A stretch of 60,922 bases of DNA, filler included, from Dugesia japonica (lineage: Eukaryota): NCBI GenBank assembly GCA_001938525.1. It is 6 parts of 6 records of this genome, joined end to end, with 100 filler letters (N's around TTAATTAATTAA, not from the genome) between each part and the next. Parts side by side here need not be neighbours in the genome. Positions count along the whole stretch, not along the records: positions 30,698 to 41,712 come from MQRL01635238.1; 5 more parts are not named here. One strand, given 5' to 3'. Shown here one piece after another: positions 4,061 through 41,712 of the stretch. A model generated the notes under the pieces. The model was given only the letters and a program-made list of their open reading frames with translations, was not told where the DNA came from and ran no database searches. The translations under genes and the position numbers were made by a program. Position 1 is the stretch's first letter; each line of letters opens with the position of its first letter.

Positions 4061-4299
4061 AAACTCCGAAAAACAAAGTGTAATATAAACTGTCATGAGA
4101 AAAATTTATTTGAATAAACAAAAATATAGAACAGTGATTTTACATACTCCAACCTTTCCTGGAATTGATAAATTTTCCAGTTTGGCCAGAATTAATGCTG
4201 CTTTATAAAAAAAATAAAAACTGTACACTATGCATAACGTTAATGAGACTTAAAGTTCATATCCTCTTTCTTCTTGGTTACCCATCTTATTAATATGGA

Positions 4300-30697: not shown

Positions 30698-31666
30698 CCC
30701 GAAGGAGACAAAATCACAATTAAAATACCAGTTTATTATACAGTAAAGCATATACGGGAAAAATTGCCGTTTAAGCCACCATATAAACTTTTGGACGAAG
30801 AAGGAATAGTGGAGGACACCACCCCAATTGGACTAATAAAGATCGACTTAGTTAAACCTAATATACTGTGGATTTTTCCNNNNNNNNNNNNNNNNNNNNN
30901 NNNAAAAGACGCAGATCCTTATAAAGCAGCGGATAAGACCAGACCGATAATGGGTGAGACCTCCGGTATGTTAAAGGAATATAAACATCGAACACAACTT
31001 GCAGCTAGCCAAATATTGCGGCCAACAACAAACCAATCAGGAAGTACTGAAGCATCTCGGGAAACTAAAGGAACCCCTAAAACCAGCCAGAATGGGGAAC
31101 GCGAAATATTCGGATCCCCATCAGCAGATAAATCAGCCAAAGACGAAGATGAGGTACAAATTACAAAATATTCCCCTCCCACTGGGAAAAGTAAGGAAAT
31201 AAAGAAAACCGACACCGCACTAAAGAAGAAATATGACCCTACCAAAGTTGACTTGGATGAAGAAGATATATTGNNNNNNNNNNNNNNNNNNNNNNNNNNN
31301 NNNNNNNNNNNNNNNNNNNNNNNAAGACCAACCATTATCACCAATATTGAGTAGAATAGCGAAAGAATTACTATCTTCGGTAATGAATGATTTGATCGAC
31401 GCAAATCATCCGTTAGAGATAGAAAATCCAATAGAAATAGAAGAGAAAGAGGCACCACCAAAACCAGTACGCACCCGAGTAGACGCAGAAACAACCACGG
31501 AACCGCGTAATCGGAGTAGACCAAGAACGAAACCCCCAGGAAATCCGGAAGAAGAAGAAGCAATGAAACAAAGACGATTAGCAACCTCAATAAACCATCA
31601 AACCAAGAGATTAGCAACGGTAGATAGTAGCAAGAAAGATACCACGAAAAATCAACGGATGATGAC
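30698..31666 (+). pseudogene. Polyprotein upstream region: possible ubiquitin-like domain (30698-30880) followed by charged/disordered linker
   Basis: PEGDKITIKIPVYYTVKHIREKL…YKLL…IVEDTTPIG…ILWIF aligns by eye with ubiquitin GKTITLEV…TIENVKAKI…QRLI…LEDGRTLS…TLHLV. Confidence 0.4.
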
Positions 31667-32137
31667 ATGCCCACGGAGGTCGTAATACGACAATTATTGC
31701 TAATGCTATATCCAGAACTAAAGATATGGATTNNNNNNNNNNNNNNNNNNNNNNNNNNNNNNNNNNNNNNNNNNNNNNNNNNTCCAGAACTAAAGATATG
31801 GATTGGTAAATTTCAATTATCCGATACCCTCAGACCATTAGCAAAAGAAATAGAAGTAGCCATCAGGAAATTTCCTGCTACTAAAGGAAATAGTCATGGT
31901 ACTAGAGACAATCTAGAAGGGGTGATGGATGAACTGTTACAGGATTCACCCACAAACGGAAGAGTAGTAGTATCAATAGCACACTTAATCAATNAGACAC
32001 ACTTATCAATTGCTAGAAGTAAGCCGTCAAAAAACTTCATTCTCAGTAAGTTGCCGATAGTGGATCTAATGCAAAACAAAATAGTACCATTGATAAAGCA
32101 ACAAGGTGGATGGAAAAAGTTTATTGAGACCATTTGT
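31667..32137 (+). CDS. Bcl-2 family domain within the retroelement polyprotein
   Basis: BH4-like TEVVIRQLLLMLY, BH3-like LSDTLRPLAKEIE, BH1-like LEGVMDELLQDSPTNGRVVVSI and BH2-like KIVPLIKQQGGWKKFIE, in canonical order and spacing. Confidence 0.8.
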
Positions 32138-32245
32138 CCTAAGCCTCAACCATCACATGAAAATGCAACTAGAGTGATAAGAGTCGTTCGGGATCAGTTA
32201 AATGAAATCGAGAATGGATGGACACGTGGACCACATGGAAATTCA

Positions 32246-34446
32246 TGGCAAGCGTTAGCAACCACGATACTCGTATTGTTCTTAATGATGGGCAGAAGCG
32301 AAGCCATATTGGCATATGACTGTGACGGAATGCAAGTTGGAAAGGAAGTCTTTTCGCTGGTAGATACGGAAGAATGCCCAGATGCAAACCCTGAAAAAAT
32401 CTCACTCCGTAACAATTCTGTCTATCATCTCTATCAGGAGTCGGATTATTATAAAGCCCAGGTACGCGAGTGTGCNNNNNNNNNNNNNNNNNNNNNNNNN
32501 NATTGCGGGTACCATAGTTATACGTCAATAATCGACCCAGGAACGGTGAGGCATCCTGTACATCTAACCGGACAGCAATGCGATGAAGGATTTGCTACAG
32601 GAAAAATTACCATCAAACATGGTACTCAGGTTGTTGCCAAGAAAGAACATGTAATCGACCAACCTATAGAAGCAGCAGGAAGTATATCCACCCATAAGNN
32701 NNNNNNNNNNNNNNNNNNNNNNNNNNNNNNNNNNNNNNNNNNNNNNNNGTATGGCAATATGCAATAGCAATCGAAACCTACACGGTAGAACTCAAGGAAT
32801 ATGAAGCATATTTCGATGCCCAAGATTTGACGATGAAGGGAAGATCATACTGCAAGGCAGCCGATGGGGCATGCAATACAGGCACATCAACATTGACATA
32901 CAAAGTAGATCACCAGGACTGTAAGTTGGCATATCTAAAAGAAGCCGTGTTTAATGAATACCAAGGACAACGTGCAATAACACCTACTTATCAAGCACCC
33001 CCAGCAGGTAATCTAAAAGAGGTAATAGATAATTTCAAGGAAACCATAAAGACAGGCCCAAAATCCTATGACCAACAATGGCACGCAACGCCGACGGTAT
33101 TAATGTCTTCGGAACAAGACGAGACTATCCGGTTAATCAAGGGAAATTCCATTTCAAAATGCGGGCAAATATTATTTAAAACAAACTATAAAGGAATATT
33201 CGTGTCCGAACATCGAATAAGAATAGCGAAAGCCGCAGTAATGTCACAAGACATCAAATTACATCTCTTCACCAATAATAAACTGGACAATATATTTCAT
33301 CGAATGCAAGATACCATCGGACAAATGTACCACGACCTCGTTCAAAATGACTGCACGTTAAACAAAGAAATATTAAAAACAAAATTAGCGATGGCAGTTA
33401 CGAACCCTGACAGTGTCACTCCATTACTTTCATTGGAAAAGGGACAATTCAGCCGAATAGTAGGAGAAGTAATGTACTTATACAAATGCAAGGCCATTGA
33501 TGCCGAATTCTCGTCTAATCCAAAACACTGCTACAACGAAATAGAAATTATTCACAACAAGGAGAAAAGATATTTACAACCCATTACTCGAATAATATCG
33601 CCGTTGGGTTATAGACCAAATATCATAAACTGTTCTAATGTATTTGGGCCACAATACGTAATGACAGACGGGTCATGGATAAGATTTCCTCAACGAATGG
33701 CAGTAGGAGTCGAACCACGAAAGTTTTCAATGTTACGGCTAAATGGGGGCATGCAATTTACCCCAATCGATATAAATAAAGGAGGAATCTACAGCAGAGA
33801 AGATTTAGAAAAAGCCAGAGAATATATGTTGTTTCCAGTCCGAAGGATGCAAATTCTCTCCAATATAGTACAATTAACCAGTGGAACCAACATCAACGGG
33901 CGAGTAAATTATGACGCACTATTACCAGCTGATCACTTCCAAAAAGCCACCGAAAATGTTATGAAAAAAATGTGGGGAAGATTCATAATATTTGGCCAAG
34001 CAATGGCAGGATTGTTGGGAGTTATGTTAATAATTTCAGTGACACGAGTAGTAATCACTCAATTATTCGCATGTTTCGATATATACAAAAGAGAGAAAAA
34101 AGTGAACTGGAAAATGGTAACAGGAATTTTTCCATTCTTAGCTAAAACCATGGTGCTTAATAGTCACTCCAAGGACATCGACAGAGTAAAGAGATTCATC
34201 CGAAAGCTCGGACAAATACGAGGATCAGACAAGGAAGTCATAATACAATTCCGACTATTGTGCGAAGAAATGAGCAATGCTAAGAAGAAAATATCATATT
34301 TCAATCAATTCAAAGAAAGGTTTAAAAATAAGGACGCAAGTAGTAGCAGTAGCAACGATGATAGAGGAGAAAACAGTGGAATACCACATGTACCCAGTTA
34401 TAAAACCGCTATGGAATATGATGCAGAATTCAAGAGACAACAATAA
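32246..34446 (+). CDS. Envelope glycoprotein, chuvirus(Jingchuvirales)-G-like, with internal signal (32246-32305) and C-terminal TM (~33982-34077)
   Basis: Signal-like WQALATTILVLFLMMGRSEA, then LAYDC…SLVDTEECP…YQ…C…CGYHSY.S…C…C….G.C…KC…L.KTNY…NNKL…C…GEV.YLYKC…CYNE…YLQPITRII…C…P.Y…GSW…GIYS. Frame continues from 32749 after an N gap. Confidence 0.85.
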
Positions 34447-34794
34447 GAAAAGATCAGCAAGATGCAACGACTAAAGAACGCGTTCAAGTTCGGAGGTGGA
34501 GAAAGCATACCAGCACCCGCACAAATGTATTATAACGCTTATCCGCAACAGGGTTGGCAACCCATGAGCCAACCACCACAACCAGTATGGGCACCAGGCA
34601 CGATGTACAACAACCCGTATATGAGCCCACCACAAGCCCCGAATATGGTCATGTTAACCGAAAATAATGTATCCACTATGTACCGAAGAATAATTGAACC
34701 AAATTTACGAGCTCCGAATAATCAAATCACAGAGGATGATAAGTTAGAGACACAAACGGTTTGTATGATGATTTCTCAGAAAGCAAAATTATTA

Positions 34795-35070
34795 CAGAAA
34801 AGGATAAAAATCGACGGAAGATGGATAATAGCTATTATCGATACAGGAGCAAGTGCGACGTTAGTTCATAAAAGGATATTGGAAGATTATCGTCTACTCA
34901 GAATAACAATTAAATAAGGTGTTATTATCACGGCCTCTGGAGAAAAAATCTCGCCCATTGGGGAAGCAATATGTGCAATAGAAAGCGATGGAACTCGATT
35001 CTGGCATAAATTGCAGATAATGAACGAAGTAGCATTCGATTGCGTATTAGGATTAGACCTGTTGCCACGA
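34795..35070 (+). pseudogene. Retropepsin domain 1 (in-frame TAA at 34915)
   Basis: IKIDGRWIIAIIDTGASATLV (DTG at 34840) … *GVIITASGEKISPIG … DCVLGLDLL. Confidence 0.88.
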
Positions 35071-35394
35071 CTCTGTCCAGATGGACTATTGGATTTGAGC
35101 AAACTAACCATCCGTGAAAACTATAATCAGGAATATGCACCAATAGGTTATTATAAAACGAGAATTATAACACAACCAAAACGACCACCACAATGGACTC
35201 AGCAAAGCTCAAGTAGCCGAAAGGAACAAGGCAACTCCAATCAGAACCATCGAAATATCACCAATACAGCCACCATGATAAAGGATGACTGGATACGGTT
35301 CCAAGAACGGGAACCCAGATGGAAAAGCAAACCACAATTAAACGCCATTAATAACCCATCAGATGTAGTATGCACGAGTCTCAATGGTGGGCCA

Positions 35395-35670
35395 GTATTA
35401 ACTATTATAGTTAGAATCAACGGTCGATCTATAACCGCTCTAGTGGACACCGGAGCAACCATATCATTACTATCTATCGACGAAATTGCGATAACAGAAT
35501 ATAAAAACATAGTACCCACAAATACTACCGCAGATGTAGCGAATGGCAGTAGTCTGAAAATTTTTGGAGAATTGGCCTGTGAAGTCGAGTACCAAGATAA
35601 TAAAATTAAGCACAATATGATTATAGTAGAAATGATGGGACAGTACATTCTAGGGACGGACATTCTTCCC
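35395..35670 (+). CDS. Retropepsin domain 2
   Basis: VRINGRSITALVDTGATISLL (DTG at 35446) … VANGSSLKIFG … YILGTDIL. Confidence 0.92.
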
Positions 35671-36059
35671 ATTCTGATGAAAAATGGAATATTGAATTTC
35701 TCAACATTACGGTTACAATCATTGGAGGGCTATACCCATGTAAAGGATCACGAAGTATTTACCACGCAGGAAATTTTGGTGCCCAGTAGATGCCAAATAT
35801 ACTGTGTAGTCANNNNNNNNNNNNNNNNNNNNNNNNNNNNNNNNNNNNNNNNNNNNNNNNNNNNNNNNNNNNNNNNNNNNNNNNNTACGGCAGGAGGAAT
35901 AACCACCGTAAATAAAAGCGGAGAAATACCAGTCAGCTTGATTAATTTCACGGAAAAAGACATCAAAATCAAGCCAAACTTCAGGATGGGTACATTAACA
36001 CCCATCGAACTAGAACCTACCATAATAGACGAAGTAGCCACCGAACCAGAAATCAACCG

Positions 36060-36597
36060 AACATTTAAAGTAGAAACAGAGACTTTGACGGAGGATCAAA
36101 AACAAGCAATACTGCAATTACTAGAGGAGTTTCGAGACATTGTTGCATGGACCGATGAGGAATTAGGTATGTGCACCGCGACAATGCATACCATTCCACT
36201 AACAGATGAAACNNNNNNNNNNNNNNNNNNNNNNNNNNNNNNNNNNNNNNNNAAAGAATTCGCAAATAAAGAAACAGCCAAATTAGTGAAAATAGGCGTA
36301 ATAGAACCTAGCTGCTCACCATGGCAGTCACCAGTGGTGTTGGTAGATAAAAAAGATGGCACACTGAGATTTTGCATTGATTACAGAAGATTAAATGCCC
36401 AAACTAAGTAGGATACATATCCATTACCAGATATCAATGAACTGTTGCAACTACTGTGTAATGCTAAAATATTCACCATATTAGATCTGCGAAGCGGTTA
36501 CTGGCAAATAAAGATCAAACCCGAAGATAGGGAGAAAACCGCCTTCTCTACAGGCAAAGACTTGTATCAGTTTATCCGTATGCCATTCGGGCTTACT
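36060..36597 (+). pseudogene. Reverse transcriptase, N-terminal half only (TAG at 36409; YxDD region deleted)
   Basis: [40 protein letters not shown]…LDLRSGYWQI…KTAF…MPFGLT, joined directly to QQSFETLRDKLLTAPIL. Confidence 0.93.
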
Positions 36598-36599
36598 AA

Positions 36600-37040
36600 A
36601 TGCAACAATCATTTGAAACATTACGTGATAAATTATTAACCGCACCAATTCTAGTACATCCAGATTTTAAAAAGCCATTTATATTAGCCACCGACGCTAG
36701 TGGATACGCGATGGGGGCGGTGTTAAGTCAATTGGATGAACAAGGGAGAGAAAGAGTAATAGCGTATTTTAGCAAGAAATTCCAAGGAGCATAATTAAAT
36801 TACAGTACCACGGAACGAGAGATAATGGCAATCGTGAAGGCTACCAAGCACTTCAGGTCATTGATACATGGACATGCAGTATTAATCTATACGGATCACT
36901 TACCAATCACTTTCATGGCCCAGAAACCACTGCGATGGAATAGGATGGCCAAGTGGCAATTGGCAATGCAAGACTATTGTCCACTGTTAAAATTTAAAAC
37001 AGGTAAGGCAAACTCCAATGCCGACTGCCTGTCCAGAATC
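36600..37040 (+). pseudogene. RNase H (TAA at 36792)
   Basis: PFILATDASGYAMGAVLSQ…IAYFS…NYSTTEREIMAI…YTDH…NSNADCLSR. Confidence 0.93.
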
Positions 37041-37339
37041 GGTGGACCAGAAGCTACAGAAAACACACCAGAAAATACAGAAACGTTTACCTTACGAGAA
37101 TTATTGGAGAAGAAAGTGGGCATGGTATATTTTATTTTAGCCGAAGATAGAAATTTCGACGGATTGAAACAAGCACAAACAGACGATGAAGAAATAAAGA
37201 TCATCACAAANNNNNNNNNNNNNNNNNNNNNNNNNNNNNNNNNNNNNNNNNNNNNNNNNNNNNNNNNNNNNNNNNNNNNNNNNNNNNNNNNNNNNNNNNN
37301 NNNNNNNNNNTTGACAGCTCAGGATGGAGAAAACACCGT

Positions 37340-38315
37340 ATTAGTTATTCCTAAAGTACGACGAGCTGCGTTACTAGAGCAGTACCACAATGGGGTACTC
37401 GGGGACATATGTCCCATAAGAAAACTGAGTCCAAGCTGAGACAGAAATATTACTGGCCACAGATGACGGAATCGGTAAAGGAATGGATTGCTAAATGCCA
37501 AATATGTGCAGCCAGAAGAGGAACAGGAAAGAGAGTAAAAGCATTACTAAAATCCATTGCGGTACCAGCAGCACCAATGGAAATAATTGCCATGGATGTA
37601 GTAGGACCACTACCACCTACTTTAAGCGGGAATATTTACATCCTCACCATATCGGATTATTTATCTAAATTCCCGGAGGCATTCCCTATGAAAAATCAAA
37701 AAGCAACCACCATCGCAGATATCCTGGTACGTAAGGTTTTCAGTCGTTATGGGACGCCAAAGAAAATATTGACGGATCAAGGGAAGAACTTTATGAGTAA
37801 CGTCTTGGCAGAAATATCGAGTTTCCTGAAAATTCACCAATTACGAACTTCACCATACCACCCACAAACGGATGGGTTAACGGAACGATTTAACAAAACC
37901 TTGATCAATATGCTGTCCAGTTATGCTCAAAAGAAACAAAATAATTGGGATAAACATATTCAACTTTGCTTATTCGCGTATCGGATGAGTGTACATCGGC
38001 AACGAAATACACGAAATTCGGTCTTATGTATGGTAGGGAGTGCAACATGCCGATTGACTTAGAATTCCAACCACCAATAACGCAATATCAAGACGAAACG
38101 GATTTTGCAGCAAATTTCAAAGAAACTATGCAGAAAATCTGGAAACAGGCAAAGGAGAATGTAGGTTTCTACCAGGAGAGCTACAAGGATCTACATGATA
38201 AATCAGCAATGCAACATTCCTTTAAAAAAGGTGTCATGGTATTGATCAATCTACCGGACATTTGTGTCGGTACAACATCGAAATTAAAAAGACCATGGCA
38301 AGGACCGTATGAAGT
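37340..38315 (+). pseudogene. Integrase (HHCC, DDE core, GPY/F), two frameshifts
   Basis: YH…GH…YYWPQM…CQIC; AMDVVGPLP; ISDYLSKF; LTDQGKNF; SPYHPQTDGLTERFN; WQGPYEV. Confidence 0.95.
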
Positions 38316-38624
38316 TAAACGGTCTCAGCGAGGACGCTGAGTTTAAAGAAAACGGGGAAGGATTAATATCGGGAGAAGAGAGTCTAGTAAAACCAGAAAC
38401 GGGTCTACCTACCGCAAATTCGGAAAGTACAGAATCAGAATCGCAAAAGATAAAGGGAGTATTAAGGACTGATAATTTTAAACACACCACCAACATAGAA
38501 AAGGCTGAGGAAAGTAGTACAATCATAACCACTTTACCAAATATTTCAGTGTAGGAGCAAGGAAGTAAATTATGTAAAATCAAATATGCATTAAGTAATA
38601 CCTTGTAATTATAAAGAAAATGTT

Positions 38625-40144
38625 ATGAAACAAAAAACTAAAACAATACCTTTCAATTCAGGTAGCCAAATGCGCCGACCACTTATAATAGAAGTCATGA
38701 GCGCCACCACACTCTACCCAATCATATACCAAGGAATCCAAACGCCGGAAACAGAGGAGAATTGTGCTCATATCATAAAGATAACGTGCCCACTTTCAAT
38801 AACACAACTGGAAGGAAGCTGTGCGCAATGTATAAAGAAAGCGCAAATCATACTAAAAACTACATGGAGGGTTATTCATGAGCAAAAGGCATGGTTATCA
38901 AGACGAGAGAATTGGTTCAAAAAAGATTGTGAAGGGTCACGAATCAAACTACCAATTGAAGCACCTATCCGGCAATCTACCGTAAAAAAGTCATGTTAGT
39001 CCTGCACCAAAATATACAGCGAAAAGTTGTTAACAGCCATTCATTTATTTCACCTTACGCTAGTACAATGGAATTGGATTAGAGTATACGAACCACAAAA
39101 AATTCTATTGCCAGGAAGTATGAGTGGACCACCAATCAAAAGATATCTAACCTGGGAAAAATCGAAATCGAATAATATCGTAAAGCCCGTAAAAGAAGGC
39201 AAAATCCAAGGGGAAGCAACAAAAGAAAAATTGCAAGAACAAGAAGANNNAATGGAAGAAAGAGAAAAGCAATTAGTCCGAACAACGCACAGAAGGACAA
39301 AGAAAAGGAAAATGATCGAGACACCGGAGGAGGCGGAACAAATGAAACCAAGTGAACCAAAAAAGAAATTATTACAAGAAAGTAAACAGAAGAATACCTT
39401 GGGAATGATAATTAGGTCATTCTTGATGTTATGGGTAATNNNNNNNNNNNNNNNNNNNNNNNNNNNNNNNNNNNNNNNNNNNNNNNNNNNNNNNNNNNNN
39501 NNNNNNNNNNNNNNNNNNNNNNNNNNNNNNNNNNNNNNNNNNNNNNNNNNNNNNNNNNNNNNNNTCTGCCAACACTGGCAATTCAGCAAATACCGATTCC
39601 AGATCAGAATCGAATGTTTAATGAACAAATAATACTCATAATCTTAGTAATAGTGACAAAGGGGATTAAATGCCAGGATTGCTGGACTAATGAGATAATA
39701 TTAACGGAACATAGAATCCATATTTATGACCATAAAACTACCATTCGAACCATGAGTAACGACGGGAGAAAGCGCGAAATAAAAGTTTTCGAAAGTTATG
39801 AACAGGTATCGGTACTATTAAAACCAGCCATCGATGGATCTAAGGGGAGCCGAATGCTACTATCCTGGTATGCGTGGAAAGCAAGTTTATGGTACAAAGG
39901 TGATGTACCGATAGACGGGCAAGCAATGCACTTCAACGAGAAGGACTGGTGGATGCATTCAGCACAGGAAATTCAAGGGGAACAAAAAAGAAGAGGTAGC
40001 CAGATACACAGTAGAACCTCGATATGGACCCATAACCAATTCAAAAGAAACCTGTCTCAGTCAATCGTGACAGAAATATTACGAAAATACGGTTCCGAAC
40101 TCCGAACTGGCGTCCCGAGCAGTATAATGGAAGAAGTCGATTAG
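38625..40144 (+). pseudogene. Additional 3' ORF(s) of unknown function between integrase and LTR
   Basis: 38625-38999 and 39027-39440 are in the same frame, split by one TAG. Cys-containing N-part, charged middle, hydrophobic stretches (LGMIIRSFLMLWV; IILIILVIV), then ~190 further open codons. Confidence 0.55.
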
Positions 40145-40414
40145 AACAAGCGAAGCCCGGTGTAAATAAACTGTAATTAAAATTAAACTATAGTGACTAT
40201 CTGATCATAGTAAATAAATGAACTATAAATGTATCAATGTATACCGTAGTAAATGTATAATATAGAAAATTTATGTATGTGTTATGAGACTAGCATGTAA
40301 TGACCTTAGAATTTGCCTTGATCTGTCAATTTTAATAGGGTCAAAGGATTTTCTGCAGCGGGGACGGGCAATGACAAATTCCGGGACGGAATTTAAACAA
40401 GACGGAGAGCGATT

Positions 40415-41712
40415 TGTTGGGGTGAAACACTCACTAAAGTAGAGAATAGTCAATATCAGAATTTACAAGGAAAGAAATAAAGCACAAAAGCAACATGAAA
40501 AGGAAATGAAGTTAAAATAAAGAAAATGCGGGGAAAATAGAAGCCACTTATGATCATTAATTAAGAAAAATTAATAAATGAAAAGAATTAACAAGAAAAA
40601 ATATTATGGAAAATAATTAATTAATATGGAAAAATTAATTAATTTCAAACGAAAAATAAACAAAATTAGATAAAAATGTTTTTTACCATTTACTCCGGCC
40701 CAGGACGTCAGAAAAAGTTCAAACAAGAAAAATTGAATAGAAAACAAGTCGGTGCAATTAGAATNNNNNNNNNNNNNNNNNNNNNNNNNNNNNNNNNNNN
40801 NNNNNNNNNNNNNNNNNNNNNNNNNNNNNNNNNNNNNNNNNNNNNNNNNNNNNNNNNNNNNNNNNNNNNNNNNNNNNNNNNNNNNNNNNTTGCCAATCAT
40901 GGCACCAAAATTCAAATAAAATCATAGAAAAATGGAACGAGAACCAATAGCAGCAGAAAAACGTGGATCCAGAAATACCCACAAACCAAGAGCGAGTCGG
41001 GGTGTCGTGAAAATCGTATATAAGGATTTTCAAATTTAACAGAAAAAACCATTAATTGTAATTTATCAACCGAAGTTAGAAAAACTACATTTAACTCATA
41101 TTTCTTACTTGGATATTCGGAACTATTATCTAGCCACTTATATCTTCGTAAATATCACCTATCAGTGTTCTCCGATTTACTCATAGCGTATTTTGCGAAG
41201 TTGTTTAAGAATTTTGAATCAGTTATAATTTTTAAGAAATTCAAGAAGCCGCGGAAATTTCAGTTTGTCAGGATCAACACAGGATTGGTGCAGTGTTAAC
41301 AAAAACCCCGTTACGGAAATCAATACTTTTACTCAGCAAAAATCGAATTCAAGTAACAACTTTTCTTTCTGATAATTATATGTGATGTAAAATTTTGTTT
41401 TCCTTAAATTATCGTTAATAAACTTGATCATAAAAAATTTTCTTTTTGTTAATATTAGTATTTATCATTTAATTCGACAATTTAAGTTGATCTAAAGTTT
41501 CTAATAAATAATATAAAGGTGATCCGTTAACACATNNNNNNNNNNNNNNNNNNNNNNNNNNNNNNNNNNNNNNNTATAAAACTAATACGGTTATGTTCTT
41601 ATGTTTCCATCTGTTATTCCGTACCTTGCGTATTCACTAAAATTGTTATAGCATCAAATTCTTAAGTAACATTATCAGTTAAAATAATTTAAAGGAGTTA
41701 AAAAAGCGTTTA
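40415..41712 (+). repeat. 3' LTR (right end not determined) with CCAAT (40944), GGGGTGT and TATATAA (41017)
   Basis: TG start after purine-rich AAACAAGACGGAGAGCGA. The same terminal 16-mer occurs at 47220, and a 1-mismatch reverse copy ends at 26334. Confidence 0.8.

What the first reader, a model, noticed from the sequence alone, without database searches (positions are those of the whole stretch)
31667..32137. Bcl-2-family domain carried by a retrotransposon
Seen: motifs in canonical order, namely BH4-like helix, LSDTLRPLAKEIE (BH3-like), GVMDELLQDSPTNGRVVVSI (cf. Bcl-2 VVEELFRDGVNWGRIVAF) and LIKQQGGWKKF (cf. WIQDNGGWDAF). The BH1 Gly-Arg is kept but NWGR is TNGR, and the BH3 GD is AK. The 22 bp duplicated on both sides of the N gap at 31733-31782 suggest no sequence is actually missing there. 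Established: Bcl-2 mimics are typical of large DNA viruses (herpes-, pox-, adenoviruses), not of retroelements. Inference: it may keep host cells alive through integration-induced DNA damage or fusogen expression.
Basis: partly seen in the sequence, partly recalled or inferred. Interest (0 to 1): 0.9.

Follow-up and report, generated by a model that had tools for sequence, protein, structure and literature searches.

The report
Bcl-2-like leader on retroelement envelope gene
A decayed copy of an envelope-carrying retrotransposon encodes, just in front of its membrane-fusion protein, a ~190-residue helical domain that resembles cell-survival proteins of the Bcl-2 family at a suggestive but not conclusive level; no such domain has been reported in a retroelement.

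Summary
The 22-bp duplication around the N gap is exact and is read in the same frame on both sides. The only relative found has that motif once and then runs on collinearly, so probably nothing is missing.

The domain belongs to the element. Its ORF continues through a hydrophobic segment into a PF24664 fusion glycoprotein, followed by a decayed protease-RT-RNase H-integrase. This is the known GAG-ENV-POL order.

The Bcl-2 likeness is real but weak:
- Pfam Bcl-2 scores 17.2 bits, below its 31.4 cut-off, and the integrase ORF scores 15.8.
- The relative (metagenome contig L001) carries a homologous domain at the same place, 22% identical with identical motif spacing.
- A two-sequence profile hits only Bcl-xL/Bcl-2 among solved structures (E 1e-4).
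- About 21 of those 25.6 bits come from the BH2-like block; without it no Bcl-2 hit remains.
- Structure prediction failed (pLDDT 38-44).

I put Bcl-2 homology at about 0.6. A pro-survival role is inference. Verdict: partly supported, and apparently unreported.

The parts
30698..31685 (+). Lys/Glu-rich coding region upstream of the domain. It is probably the tail of the gag-side polyprotein and is cut by the piece's edge. It contains two N gaps.
   Evidence: ORFs. tblastn places L001 ORF residues 938-987 on 30698-30847 (E 7e-4). No Pfam family.
31667..32245 (+). Bcl-2-like domain, residues 1-193 of the ORF. It starts at the first ATG after a stop in this frame.
   Evidence: Pfam PF00452 on residues 67-149, 17.2 bits, E 0.008, below cut-off. 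PDB hits to Bcl-xL/Bcl-2: E 0.7 alone, E 1e-4 as a two-sequence profile. Homologous domain in L001.
31733..31782 (.). Assembly gap of 50 N, flanked by an exact 22-bp duplicate (31711-31732 and 31783-31804).
   Evidence: Both copies are read in the same frame. The relative has the motif once.
31817..31855 (+). BH3-like stretch (LSDTLRPLAKEIE).
   Evidence: Aligned to the BH3 region of Bcl-xL. The G-D pair is absent. It gives no independent signal.
31919..31978 (+). BH1-like stretch (G-R kept).
   Evidence: Alignments. It adds only about 4 bits to the profile score (searches compared). The relative has N-N-T-K here.
32090..32122 (+). BH2-like stretch (GGW..F). This is the best-conserved block between the two copies.
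   Evidence: About 21 bits, E about 0.002 against the Bcl-2 family on its own.
32246..32305 (+). The only strongly hydrophobic segment, ending in a small-x-small motif. It is the signal or anchor sequence of the glycoprotein and possibly the membrane anchor of the domain.
   Evidence: Hydropathy maxima at the same place in both copies, about 45 residues after GGW. The Pfam glycoprotein match starts at residue 197.
32306..34446 (+). Envelope-like fusion glycoprotein (Pfam PF24664 Monjiviricetes_fusion) with a C-terminal transmembrane segment. It lies in two ORF pieces on either side of the N gap at 32699-32748, and the frame relation across that gap is unknown.
   Evidence: E 8e-19 and 3e-60. 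41-43% identity to P0001/L001.
34462..38340 (+). pol: two protease-like domains, an RT fragment, an RNase H C-terminal part and integrase. The gene is broken.
   Evidence: Pfam. Counts of breaks.

Best explanation
The region is the N-terminal, cytosolic part of the envelope precursor of a Ty3/gypsy-type, envelope-carrying LTR retroelement with the order GAG-ENV-POL. It is most likely a very divergent Bcl-2-family helical domain.

Shown:
- The domain is coding.
- It is homologous between two distant copies.
- It sits directly upstream of the hydrophobic segment that starts the fusion glycoprotein.
- Its best-conserved block is BH2-like.

Inferred:
- The hydrophobic segment acts as an internal signal/anchor. 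It sends the glycoprotein ectodomain into the ER while the Bcl-2-like domain stays in the cytosol.
- Signal-peptidase cleavage after the small-x-small motif would leave the domain tail-anchored, the topology of cellular Bcl-2 proteins.
- The domain would then hold off the host's mitochondrial cell-death pathway in cells that express the element.

My estimates are about 0.6 for Bcl-2 homology and about 0.65-0.7 for a pro-survival role given homology.
For: - Pfam Bcl-2 covers 80% of the model on residues 67-149 (E 0.008).
- 33 of the 35 solved-structure sequences listed at E up to 10 are Bcl-xL constructs, aligned collinearly over BH3, BH1 and BH2.
- The relative's domain on its own also has Bcl-xL/Bcl-2 as best hits (E 0.18).
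- Profiles of the two copies give E 1e-4, 25.6 and 24.8 bits, with all 60 listed hits Bcl-xL/Bcl-2 and no composition bias.
- The two copies are 22% identical with identical spacing from PEL to GGW. None of 20000 shuffles reached the observed similarity, and shifted registers lose it.
- Each copy keeps a different subset of family hallmarks. The window keeps G-R of BH1. The relative keeps the N of BH1, and its BH2 matches Bcl-xL at more positions, including the tryptophan four residues before GGW.
- A hydrophobic segment follows about 45 residues after BH2 in both copies.
- The ORF is continuous with the glycoprotein.
Against: - Pfam's gathering score is not met, and the integrase ORF of the same element scores nearly as high (15.8 bits).
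- The relative's domain gives no Pfam Bcl-2 hit.
- The N-terminal 99 profile positions alone find no Bcl-2 protein. About 21 of the 25.6 bits come from 20 BH2-like residues.
- A GGW..F motif also occurs in an unrelated HNH-repeat protein.
- The BH3 G-D pair is missing in both copies, and the BH1 G-R is not conserved between them.
- AlphaFold2 without an alignment gave pLDDT 37.8 and 43.8. Foldseek matches to Bcl-2 proteins had E above 2 and TM about 0.19, so they echo sequence, not fold.
- No other relatives exist in 1.8 billion representatives, so selection could not be measured.
- The window copy is decayed.
Confidence: 0.42

Rival explanations
1. The domain is a lineage-specific helical leader or linker of the envelope precursor with no Bcl-2 ancestry. 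The resemblance would be a conserved short GGW..F motif plus generic amphipathic helices. Its role would be local, such as membrane insertion, trafficking or contact with Gag.
For: Pfam is below threshold and a similar score falls on the integrase. There is no Bcl-2 signal without the BH2-like block. The relative has no Pfam hit. The motif recurs in an HNH-repeat protein. Two-sequence profiles can give spurious low E-values through short motifs, as with the LRR proteins. No structural support was obtained. The finding was picked by eye for its likeness.
Against: E is 1e-4 with one single stretch, no bias, and only Bcl-2-family hits among the 60 listed. BH3-, BH1- and BH2-like blocks are collinear with the spacing of loop-deleted Bcl-xL constructs. 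The relative, which was not chosen for any likeness, matches BH2 better than the window does.
Confidence: 0.37
2. The domain has a Bcl-2 fold but does not regulate cell death. Some poxvirus Bcl-2-fold proteins block innate immune signalling (own knowledge). The cytosolic leader peptide of foamy-virus Env contacts the capsid during budding (own knowledge). Either kind of role is possible here.
For: The groove hallmarks are poorly kept: no BH3 G-D, and the BH1 G-R is not shared by the two copies. The domain diverges fast, at 22% identity against 41-43% for the glycoprotein. In L001 it is fused in frame to a gag-side polyprotein.
Against: BH2, which lines the groove, is the best-conserved block. 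The best matches are pro-survival members, though these dominate the PDB.
Confidence: 0.18
3. The domain is a host gene fragment or an assembly chimera next to the element, not part of it.
For: The scaffold is gap-rich, with 13 N runs in 11 kb.
Against: The same domain-to-glycoprotein junction is read without any N in an independent metagenome contig. One ORF spans domain, hydrophobic segment and glycoprotein N-terminus.
Confidence: 0.03

Closest known systems
Cellular Bcl-2 / Bcl-xL family (Pfam PF00452)
   Same: The BH3-, BH1- and BH2-like blocks are collinear with similar spacing. BH2 is well matched. The domain has the size of a loop-less family member. A hydrophobic segment follows the domain.
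   Different: It scores below Pfam's threshold. The BH3 G-D pair is absent. The NWGR motif is only partly kept, and differently in the two copies. The hydrophobic segment is also the start of a viral-type glycoprotein. The fold is not confirmed.
Bcl-2 homologues of large DNA viruses (herpes-, pox-, adeno-, asfar- and iridoviruses; own knowledge; one herpesvirus homologue appeared as a weak hit)
   Same: It would be a very divergent Bcl-2-like protein carried by a mobile or viral genome.
   Different: Those are separate genes of DNA viruses. Here the domain is the N-terminal part of the envelope reading frame of a reverse-transcribing element. I found no report of this.
GAG-ENV-POL Ty3/gypsy 'errantiviruses' of Nematoda, Bryozoa and Platyhelminthes (PMC13524379; Sacco et al. 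2022 as cited there)
   Same: The envelope gene lies between gag and pol. The fusogen is of the gB/chuvirus-like kind. pol runs PR-RT-RH-IN. That paper notes some envelope ectodomains are flanked by two transmembrane segments instead of a signal peptide.
   Different: That paper does not mention any Bcl-2-like part ('Bcl' occurs 0 times). No LTRs lie inside this piece.
Mosquito BEL/Pao elements with a chuvirus-like glycoprotein (PMC7642597)
   Same: A retroelement that carries a glycoprotein of the Monjiviricetes kind.
   Different: The pol superfamily and gene order differ, and no N-terminal Bcl-2-like extension is described.
Long functional Env leader or signal peptides (foamy-virus leader peptide, arenavirus stable signal peptide; own knowledge)
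   Same: The proposed logic is the same: the part of the envelope precursor before the signal/anchor stays as a membrane-anchored cytosolic product with its own function.
   Different: Those have no Bcl-2 likeness. Cleavage and topology here are inferred only.

Membership tests
Bcl-2 family (PF00452) | Match to the family profile at or above the curated score | tested here: not met
   17.2 bits against a 31.4 cut-off for the window. No hit for the relative's domain.
Bcl-2 family (PF00452) | Significant sequence match to family members of known structure | tested here: met
   Two-sequence profiles give E 1e-4, and all 60 listed hits are Bcl-xL/Bcl-2. About 21 of the 25.6 bits come from BH2.
Bcl-2 family (PF00452) | BH2 motif (W...GGW..F) | tested here: met
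   GGW..F is present in both copies at the same position. The upstream W is present in the relative only.
Bcl-2 family (PF00452) | BH1 motif with conserved G-R | tested here: inconclusive
   The window has T-N-G-R and the relative has N-N-T-K at the aligned place.
Bcl-2 family (PF00452) | BH3 motif with L...G-D | tested here: not met
   A-K replaces G-D in the window and the relative has no G-D. This motif is weak in many pro-survival members (own knowledge).
Bcl-2 family (PF00452) | Helical bundle around a central hydrophobic hairpin | tested here: inconclusive
   AlphaFold2 gave pLDDT 37.8 and 43.8. Foldseek gave E above 2 and TM about 0.19.
Bcl-2 family (PF00452) | C-terminal membrane anchor | tested here: met
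   The only hydrophobic segment lies about 45 residues after BH2 in both copies. It is also the glycoprotein's signal/anchor.
Bcl-2 family (PF00452) | Binding of BH3 ligands and control of cell death | not testable with these tools
   No functional data.
GAG-ENV-POL Ty3/gypsy envelope-carrying retroelements | pol with PR-RT-RNase H-IN order | tested here: met
   Pfam hits in that order. The gene is decayed.
GAG-ENV-POL Ty3/gypsy envelope-carrying retroelements | Fusion glycoprotein gene between gag and pol | tested here: met
   In the window the glycoprotein is directly followed by pol. In L001, gag with CCHC knuckles lies upstream of the same glycoprotein.
GAG-ENV-POL Ty3/gypsy envelope-carrying retroelements | Long terminal repeats | tested here: inconclusive
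   No long direct repeat lies in the 11-kb piece. The 5' end is cut by the piece's edge.

The most novel reading that the evidence does not exclude
A reverse-transcribing element encodes a true Bcl-2 homologue as the cytosolic leader of its envelope precursor. One hydrophobic segment serves both as the signal for the fusogen and as the tail anchor of the Bcl-2-like product. The arrangement is conserved in at least two lineages whose glycoproteins are only about 40% identical. This would be the first Bcl-2 homologue in a retroelement.
Probability: 0.4. Interest if true: 0.8.

Novelty: new variant of a known kind. Interest (0 to 1): 0.6.

Why it matters
Capture of cell-death regulators is a hallmark of large DNA viruses. 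Finding one in a retrotransposon would show that germline-invading retroelements of invertebrates also manipulate host cell survival. It would also add an accessory function to the recently recognised GAG-ENV-POL errantivirus-like elements. And it would give a compact example of one membrane segment serving two proteins. If the likeness is only a motif, the region is still a conserved, unannotated N-terminal extension of a retroelement envelope protein.

Tried and rejected
- Word-indexed protein searches with the window domain and with the relative's domain in its long ORF found nothing.
- The exhaustive HMMER search of 1.8 billion representatives with the window domain gave two hits, both spurious. 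One is a bacterial repeat adhesin. The other is an HNH-repeat protein.
- BLASTP of the two domains alone was not significant. Their homology shows only when anchored by the flanks and tested in register.
- AlphaFold2 on one sequence, at two lengths, gave low confidence.
- Foldseek on the poor model gave Bcl-2 names but at chance level.
- The glycoprotein has no sequence relative among solved structures.
- There are no tRNA genes, no LTR pair and no informative tandem repeats in the piece.
- The ORFs at 38625-40144 have no Pfam family.
- dN/dS was not attempted. Only two copies are known, at 22% identity, which is saturated.
- The chimera or host-gene reading was rejected because of L001.

Full report
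**What is in the sequence**

The piece (30698-41712) is A-rich coding DNA on the + strand with 13 N runs. In this frame several stops lie just upstream, and the ATG at 31667 is the first after the last stop. An upstream Lys/Glu-rich ORF in another frame ends a few bases inside it.

**The gap**

- The 22-mer TCCAGAACTAAAGATATGGATT flanks the 50 N exactly.
- No other gap in the piece has such an overlap.
- Both copies are read as PELKIWI.
- Gap plus duplicate is 72 bases, so the frame is kept whether the gap is empty or not.
- The single relative has this motif once. Its following residues align with the window's post-gap residues.

I conclude that the two sides are continuous and in frame, and that probably nothing is missing. 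I looked up and filled in no letters.

**Context**

- Residues 197-342 of the same ORF match the start of Pfam PF24664 (Monjiviricetes_fusion, E 8e-19).
- The next ORF, 32827-34446, matches the rest of that family (E 3e-60).
- The two pieces lie in different frames on either side of the N gap at 32699-32748. This cannot be called a break.
- Sixteen bases after the glycoprotein stop, pol begins: two protease-like domains, an RT fragment, the end of RNase H, and integrase.

pol is decayed in the following ways:
- Two stops lie in the frame that carries the proteases and the RT start.
- The recognisable pieces lie in three frames.
- The RT catalytic motif is absent from every + frame of the interval, and only part of the RT profile is matched.

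That makes at least two stops, at least two frame changes outside N gaps, and one internal loss. No LTR pair lies in the piece.

The order envelope-then-pol is the GAG-ENV-POL order described for Ty3/gypsy envelope-carrying elements of nematodes, bryozoans and flatworms (PMC13524379). That paper notes that some such envelope ectodomains are flanked by two transmembrane segments rather than a signal peptide. It never mentions Bcl-2.

**The only relative**

The glycoprotein search returned one protein, P0001, at 41% identity. Its contig L001 is a 5.9-kb metagenome scaffold with no N. L001 carries an ORF of 1451 codons with these parts in order:
- CCHC zinc knuckles;
- about 950 residues with no family match;
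- a stretch homologous to the window's domain;
- a hydrophobic segment;
- the glycoprotein N-terminus.

P0001 continues in the same frame after one in-frame stop.

tblastn aligns L001 residues 1244-1443 with window 31784-32392 (E 3e-13), and residues 938-987 with 30698-30847. Within the domain proper:
- The copies are 22% identical (32 of 146 positions).
- PEL to GGW is 107 residues in both.
- 27 identities in 140 columns compare with 8.7 ± 2.8 in shuffles, and none of 20000 shuffles reached the observed value.
- The similarity vanishes in shifted registers.

So the domain is a real, conserved but fast-evolving part of this element family. It is not a chimera.

**Is it Bcl-2-like?**

*For:*
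- Pfam Bcl-2 covers model positions 21-100 on residues 67-149 (E 0.008).
- Against solved structures, 33 of the 35 listed sequences are Bcl-xL constructs, aligned collinearly from BH3 through BH2 (E 0.7).
- The relative's domain alone also ranks Bcl-xL/Bcl-2 first (E 0.18, BH2 region only).
- Profiles of the two copies reach E 1e-4 (25.6 and 24.8 bits). Every one of the 60 listed hits is Bcl-xL or Bcl-2, each with one stretch and no bias.
- The two copies keep complementary hallmarks. The window keeps G-R of BH1. The relative keeps the N of BH1, and its BH2 matches Bcl-xL at more positions, including the tryptophan four residues before GGW.

*Against:*
- Pfam's threshold is missed.
- The element's own integrase scores 15.8 bits on the same model, over a stretch that even shares a 19-nt near-repeat with the BH1-like DNA. 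That sets the noise level.
- The relative has no Pfam hit.
- Dissection shows that the first 99 profile positions find no Bcl-2 protein. The last 66 find the family at about 21 bits over 20 residues. These hits include a nematode BCL-2 (named) and a herpesvirus homologue.
- The same small profile also 'found' leucine-rich-repeat proteins through a short motif. This is a warning about two-sequence profiles.
- The window domain's only hits in 1.8 billion representatives were spurious.
- Structure prediction failed. The Foldseek list of Bcl-2 names had E above 2 and TM about 0.19, so it repeats the sequence signal.

I put homology at about 0.6 and do not file the domain as a confirmed family member.

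**How it may work (inferred)**

The only hydrophobic segment (32246-32305) lies about 45 residues after BH2 in both copies. It ends in a small-x-small motif just before the conserved start of the ectodomain. As an internal signal/anchor it would put the ectodomain into the ER lumen and leave the upstream domain in the cytosol. Cleavage by signal peptidase would then yield a tail-anchored Bcl-2-like product, with the topology of cellular Bcl-2 proteins (own knowledge).

In the window the ORF begins with its own ATG at the start of the domain, and the relative has a methionine at nearly the same place. In the relative the domain is also in frame with the gag side. A pro-survival role is the simplest reading. 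A non-apoptotic role for a Bcl-2 fold, or no Bcl-2 ancestry at all, remain live rivals.

**Novelty**

Literature searches found no Bcl-2 homologue in a retroelement. The element type is known. The domain on its envelope gene appears to be new.

- L001 was fetched by look-up of a protein that the search with the finding's own glycoprotein returned. It carries a relative of an envelope-bearing retroelement of an animal. After re-reading the bar I made no further fetch and scanned no viral or metagenome collection.
- While working out the counts for pol I reasoned about where its ORF pieces abut. No places are given here, in my notes or in script output.
- The alignment tools printed consensus lines of their own.
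- The source organism is unknown. The scaffold name of L001 (BUSI22-1) might point to a bryozoan sample, which is a guess.

Noticed in passing
window 34462-35700: Two aspartic-protease-like domains stand in tandem ahead of RT, each with a D-T-G-A motif. The first is split by a stop.
   Followed up: partly
L001 1601-3658: About 690-950 residues between the gag zinc knuckles and the Bcl-2-like domain have no Pfam family. This is a very long, unexplained part of the gag-side polyprotein.
   Followed up: partly
window 37892-38050 and 31947-31965 / 37859-37877: The integrase ORF gives a sub-threshold Pfam Bcl-2 hit (15.8 bits). A 19-nt near-repeat links it to the BH1-like DNA. I judge this to be chance, and it is useful as a noise marker.
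   Followed up: yes
L001 about 4140-4190: The linker after BH2 in the relative carries a leucine-rich-repeat-like motif. It makes a small profile hit Leptospira LRR proteins at E 3e-7, which is spurious.
   Followed up: partly
window 38341-41712: Downstream of integrase there are + strand ORFs (38625-40144) with no family match. After them comes a very AT-rich stretch (24-28% GC) with two 125-N gaps. It is unclear whether this is element tail, LTR or host flank.
   Followed up: partly
window 31667-31685: The upstream Lys/Glu-rich ORF and the Bcl-2-like ORF overlap by 19 bases in different frames. In L001 the two regions are in one frame. This could be a gene boundary, a frameshift site or decay, and it remains undecided.
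   Followed up: partly
L001 (record name): The scaffold name BUSI22-1 of a host-associated metagenome may point to a bryozoan source. That would fit the reported GAG-ENV-POL elements of Bryozoa. It is a guess only.
   Followed up: no
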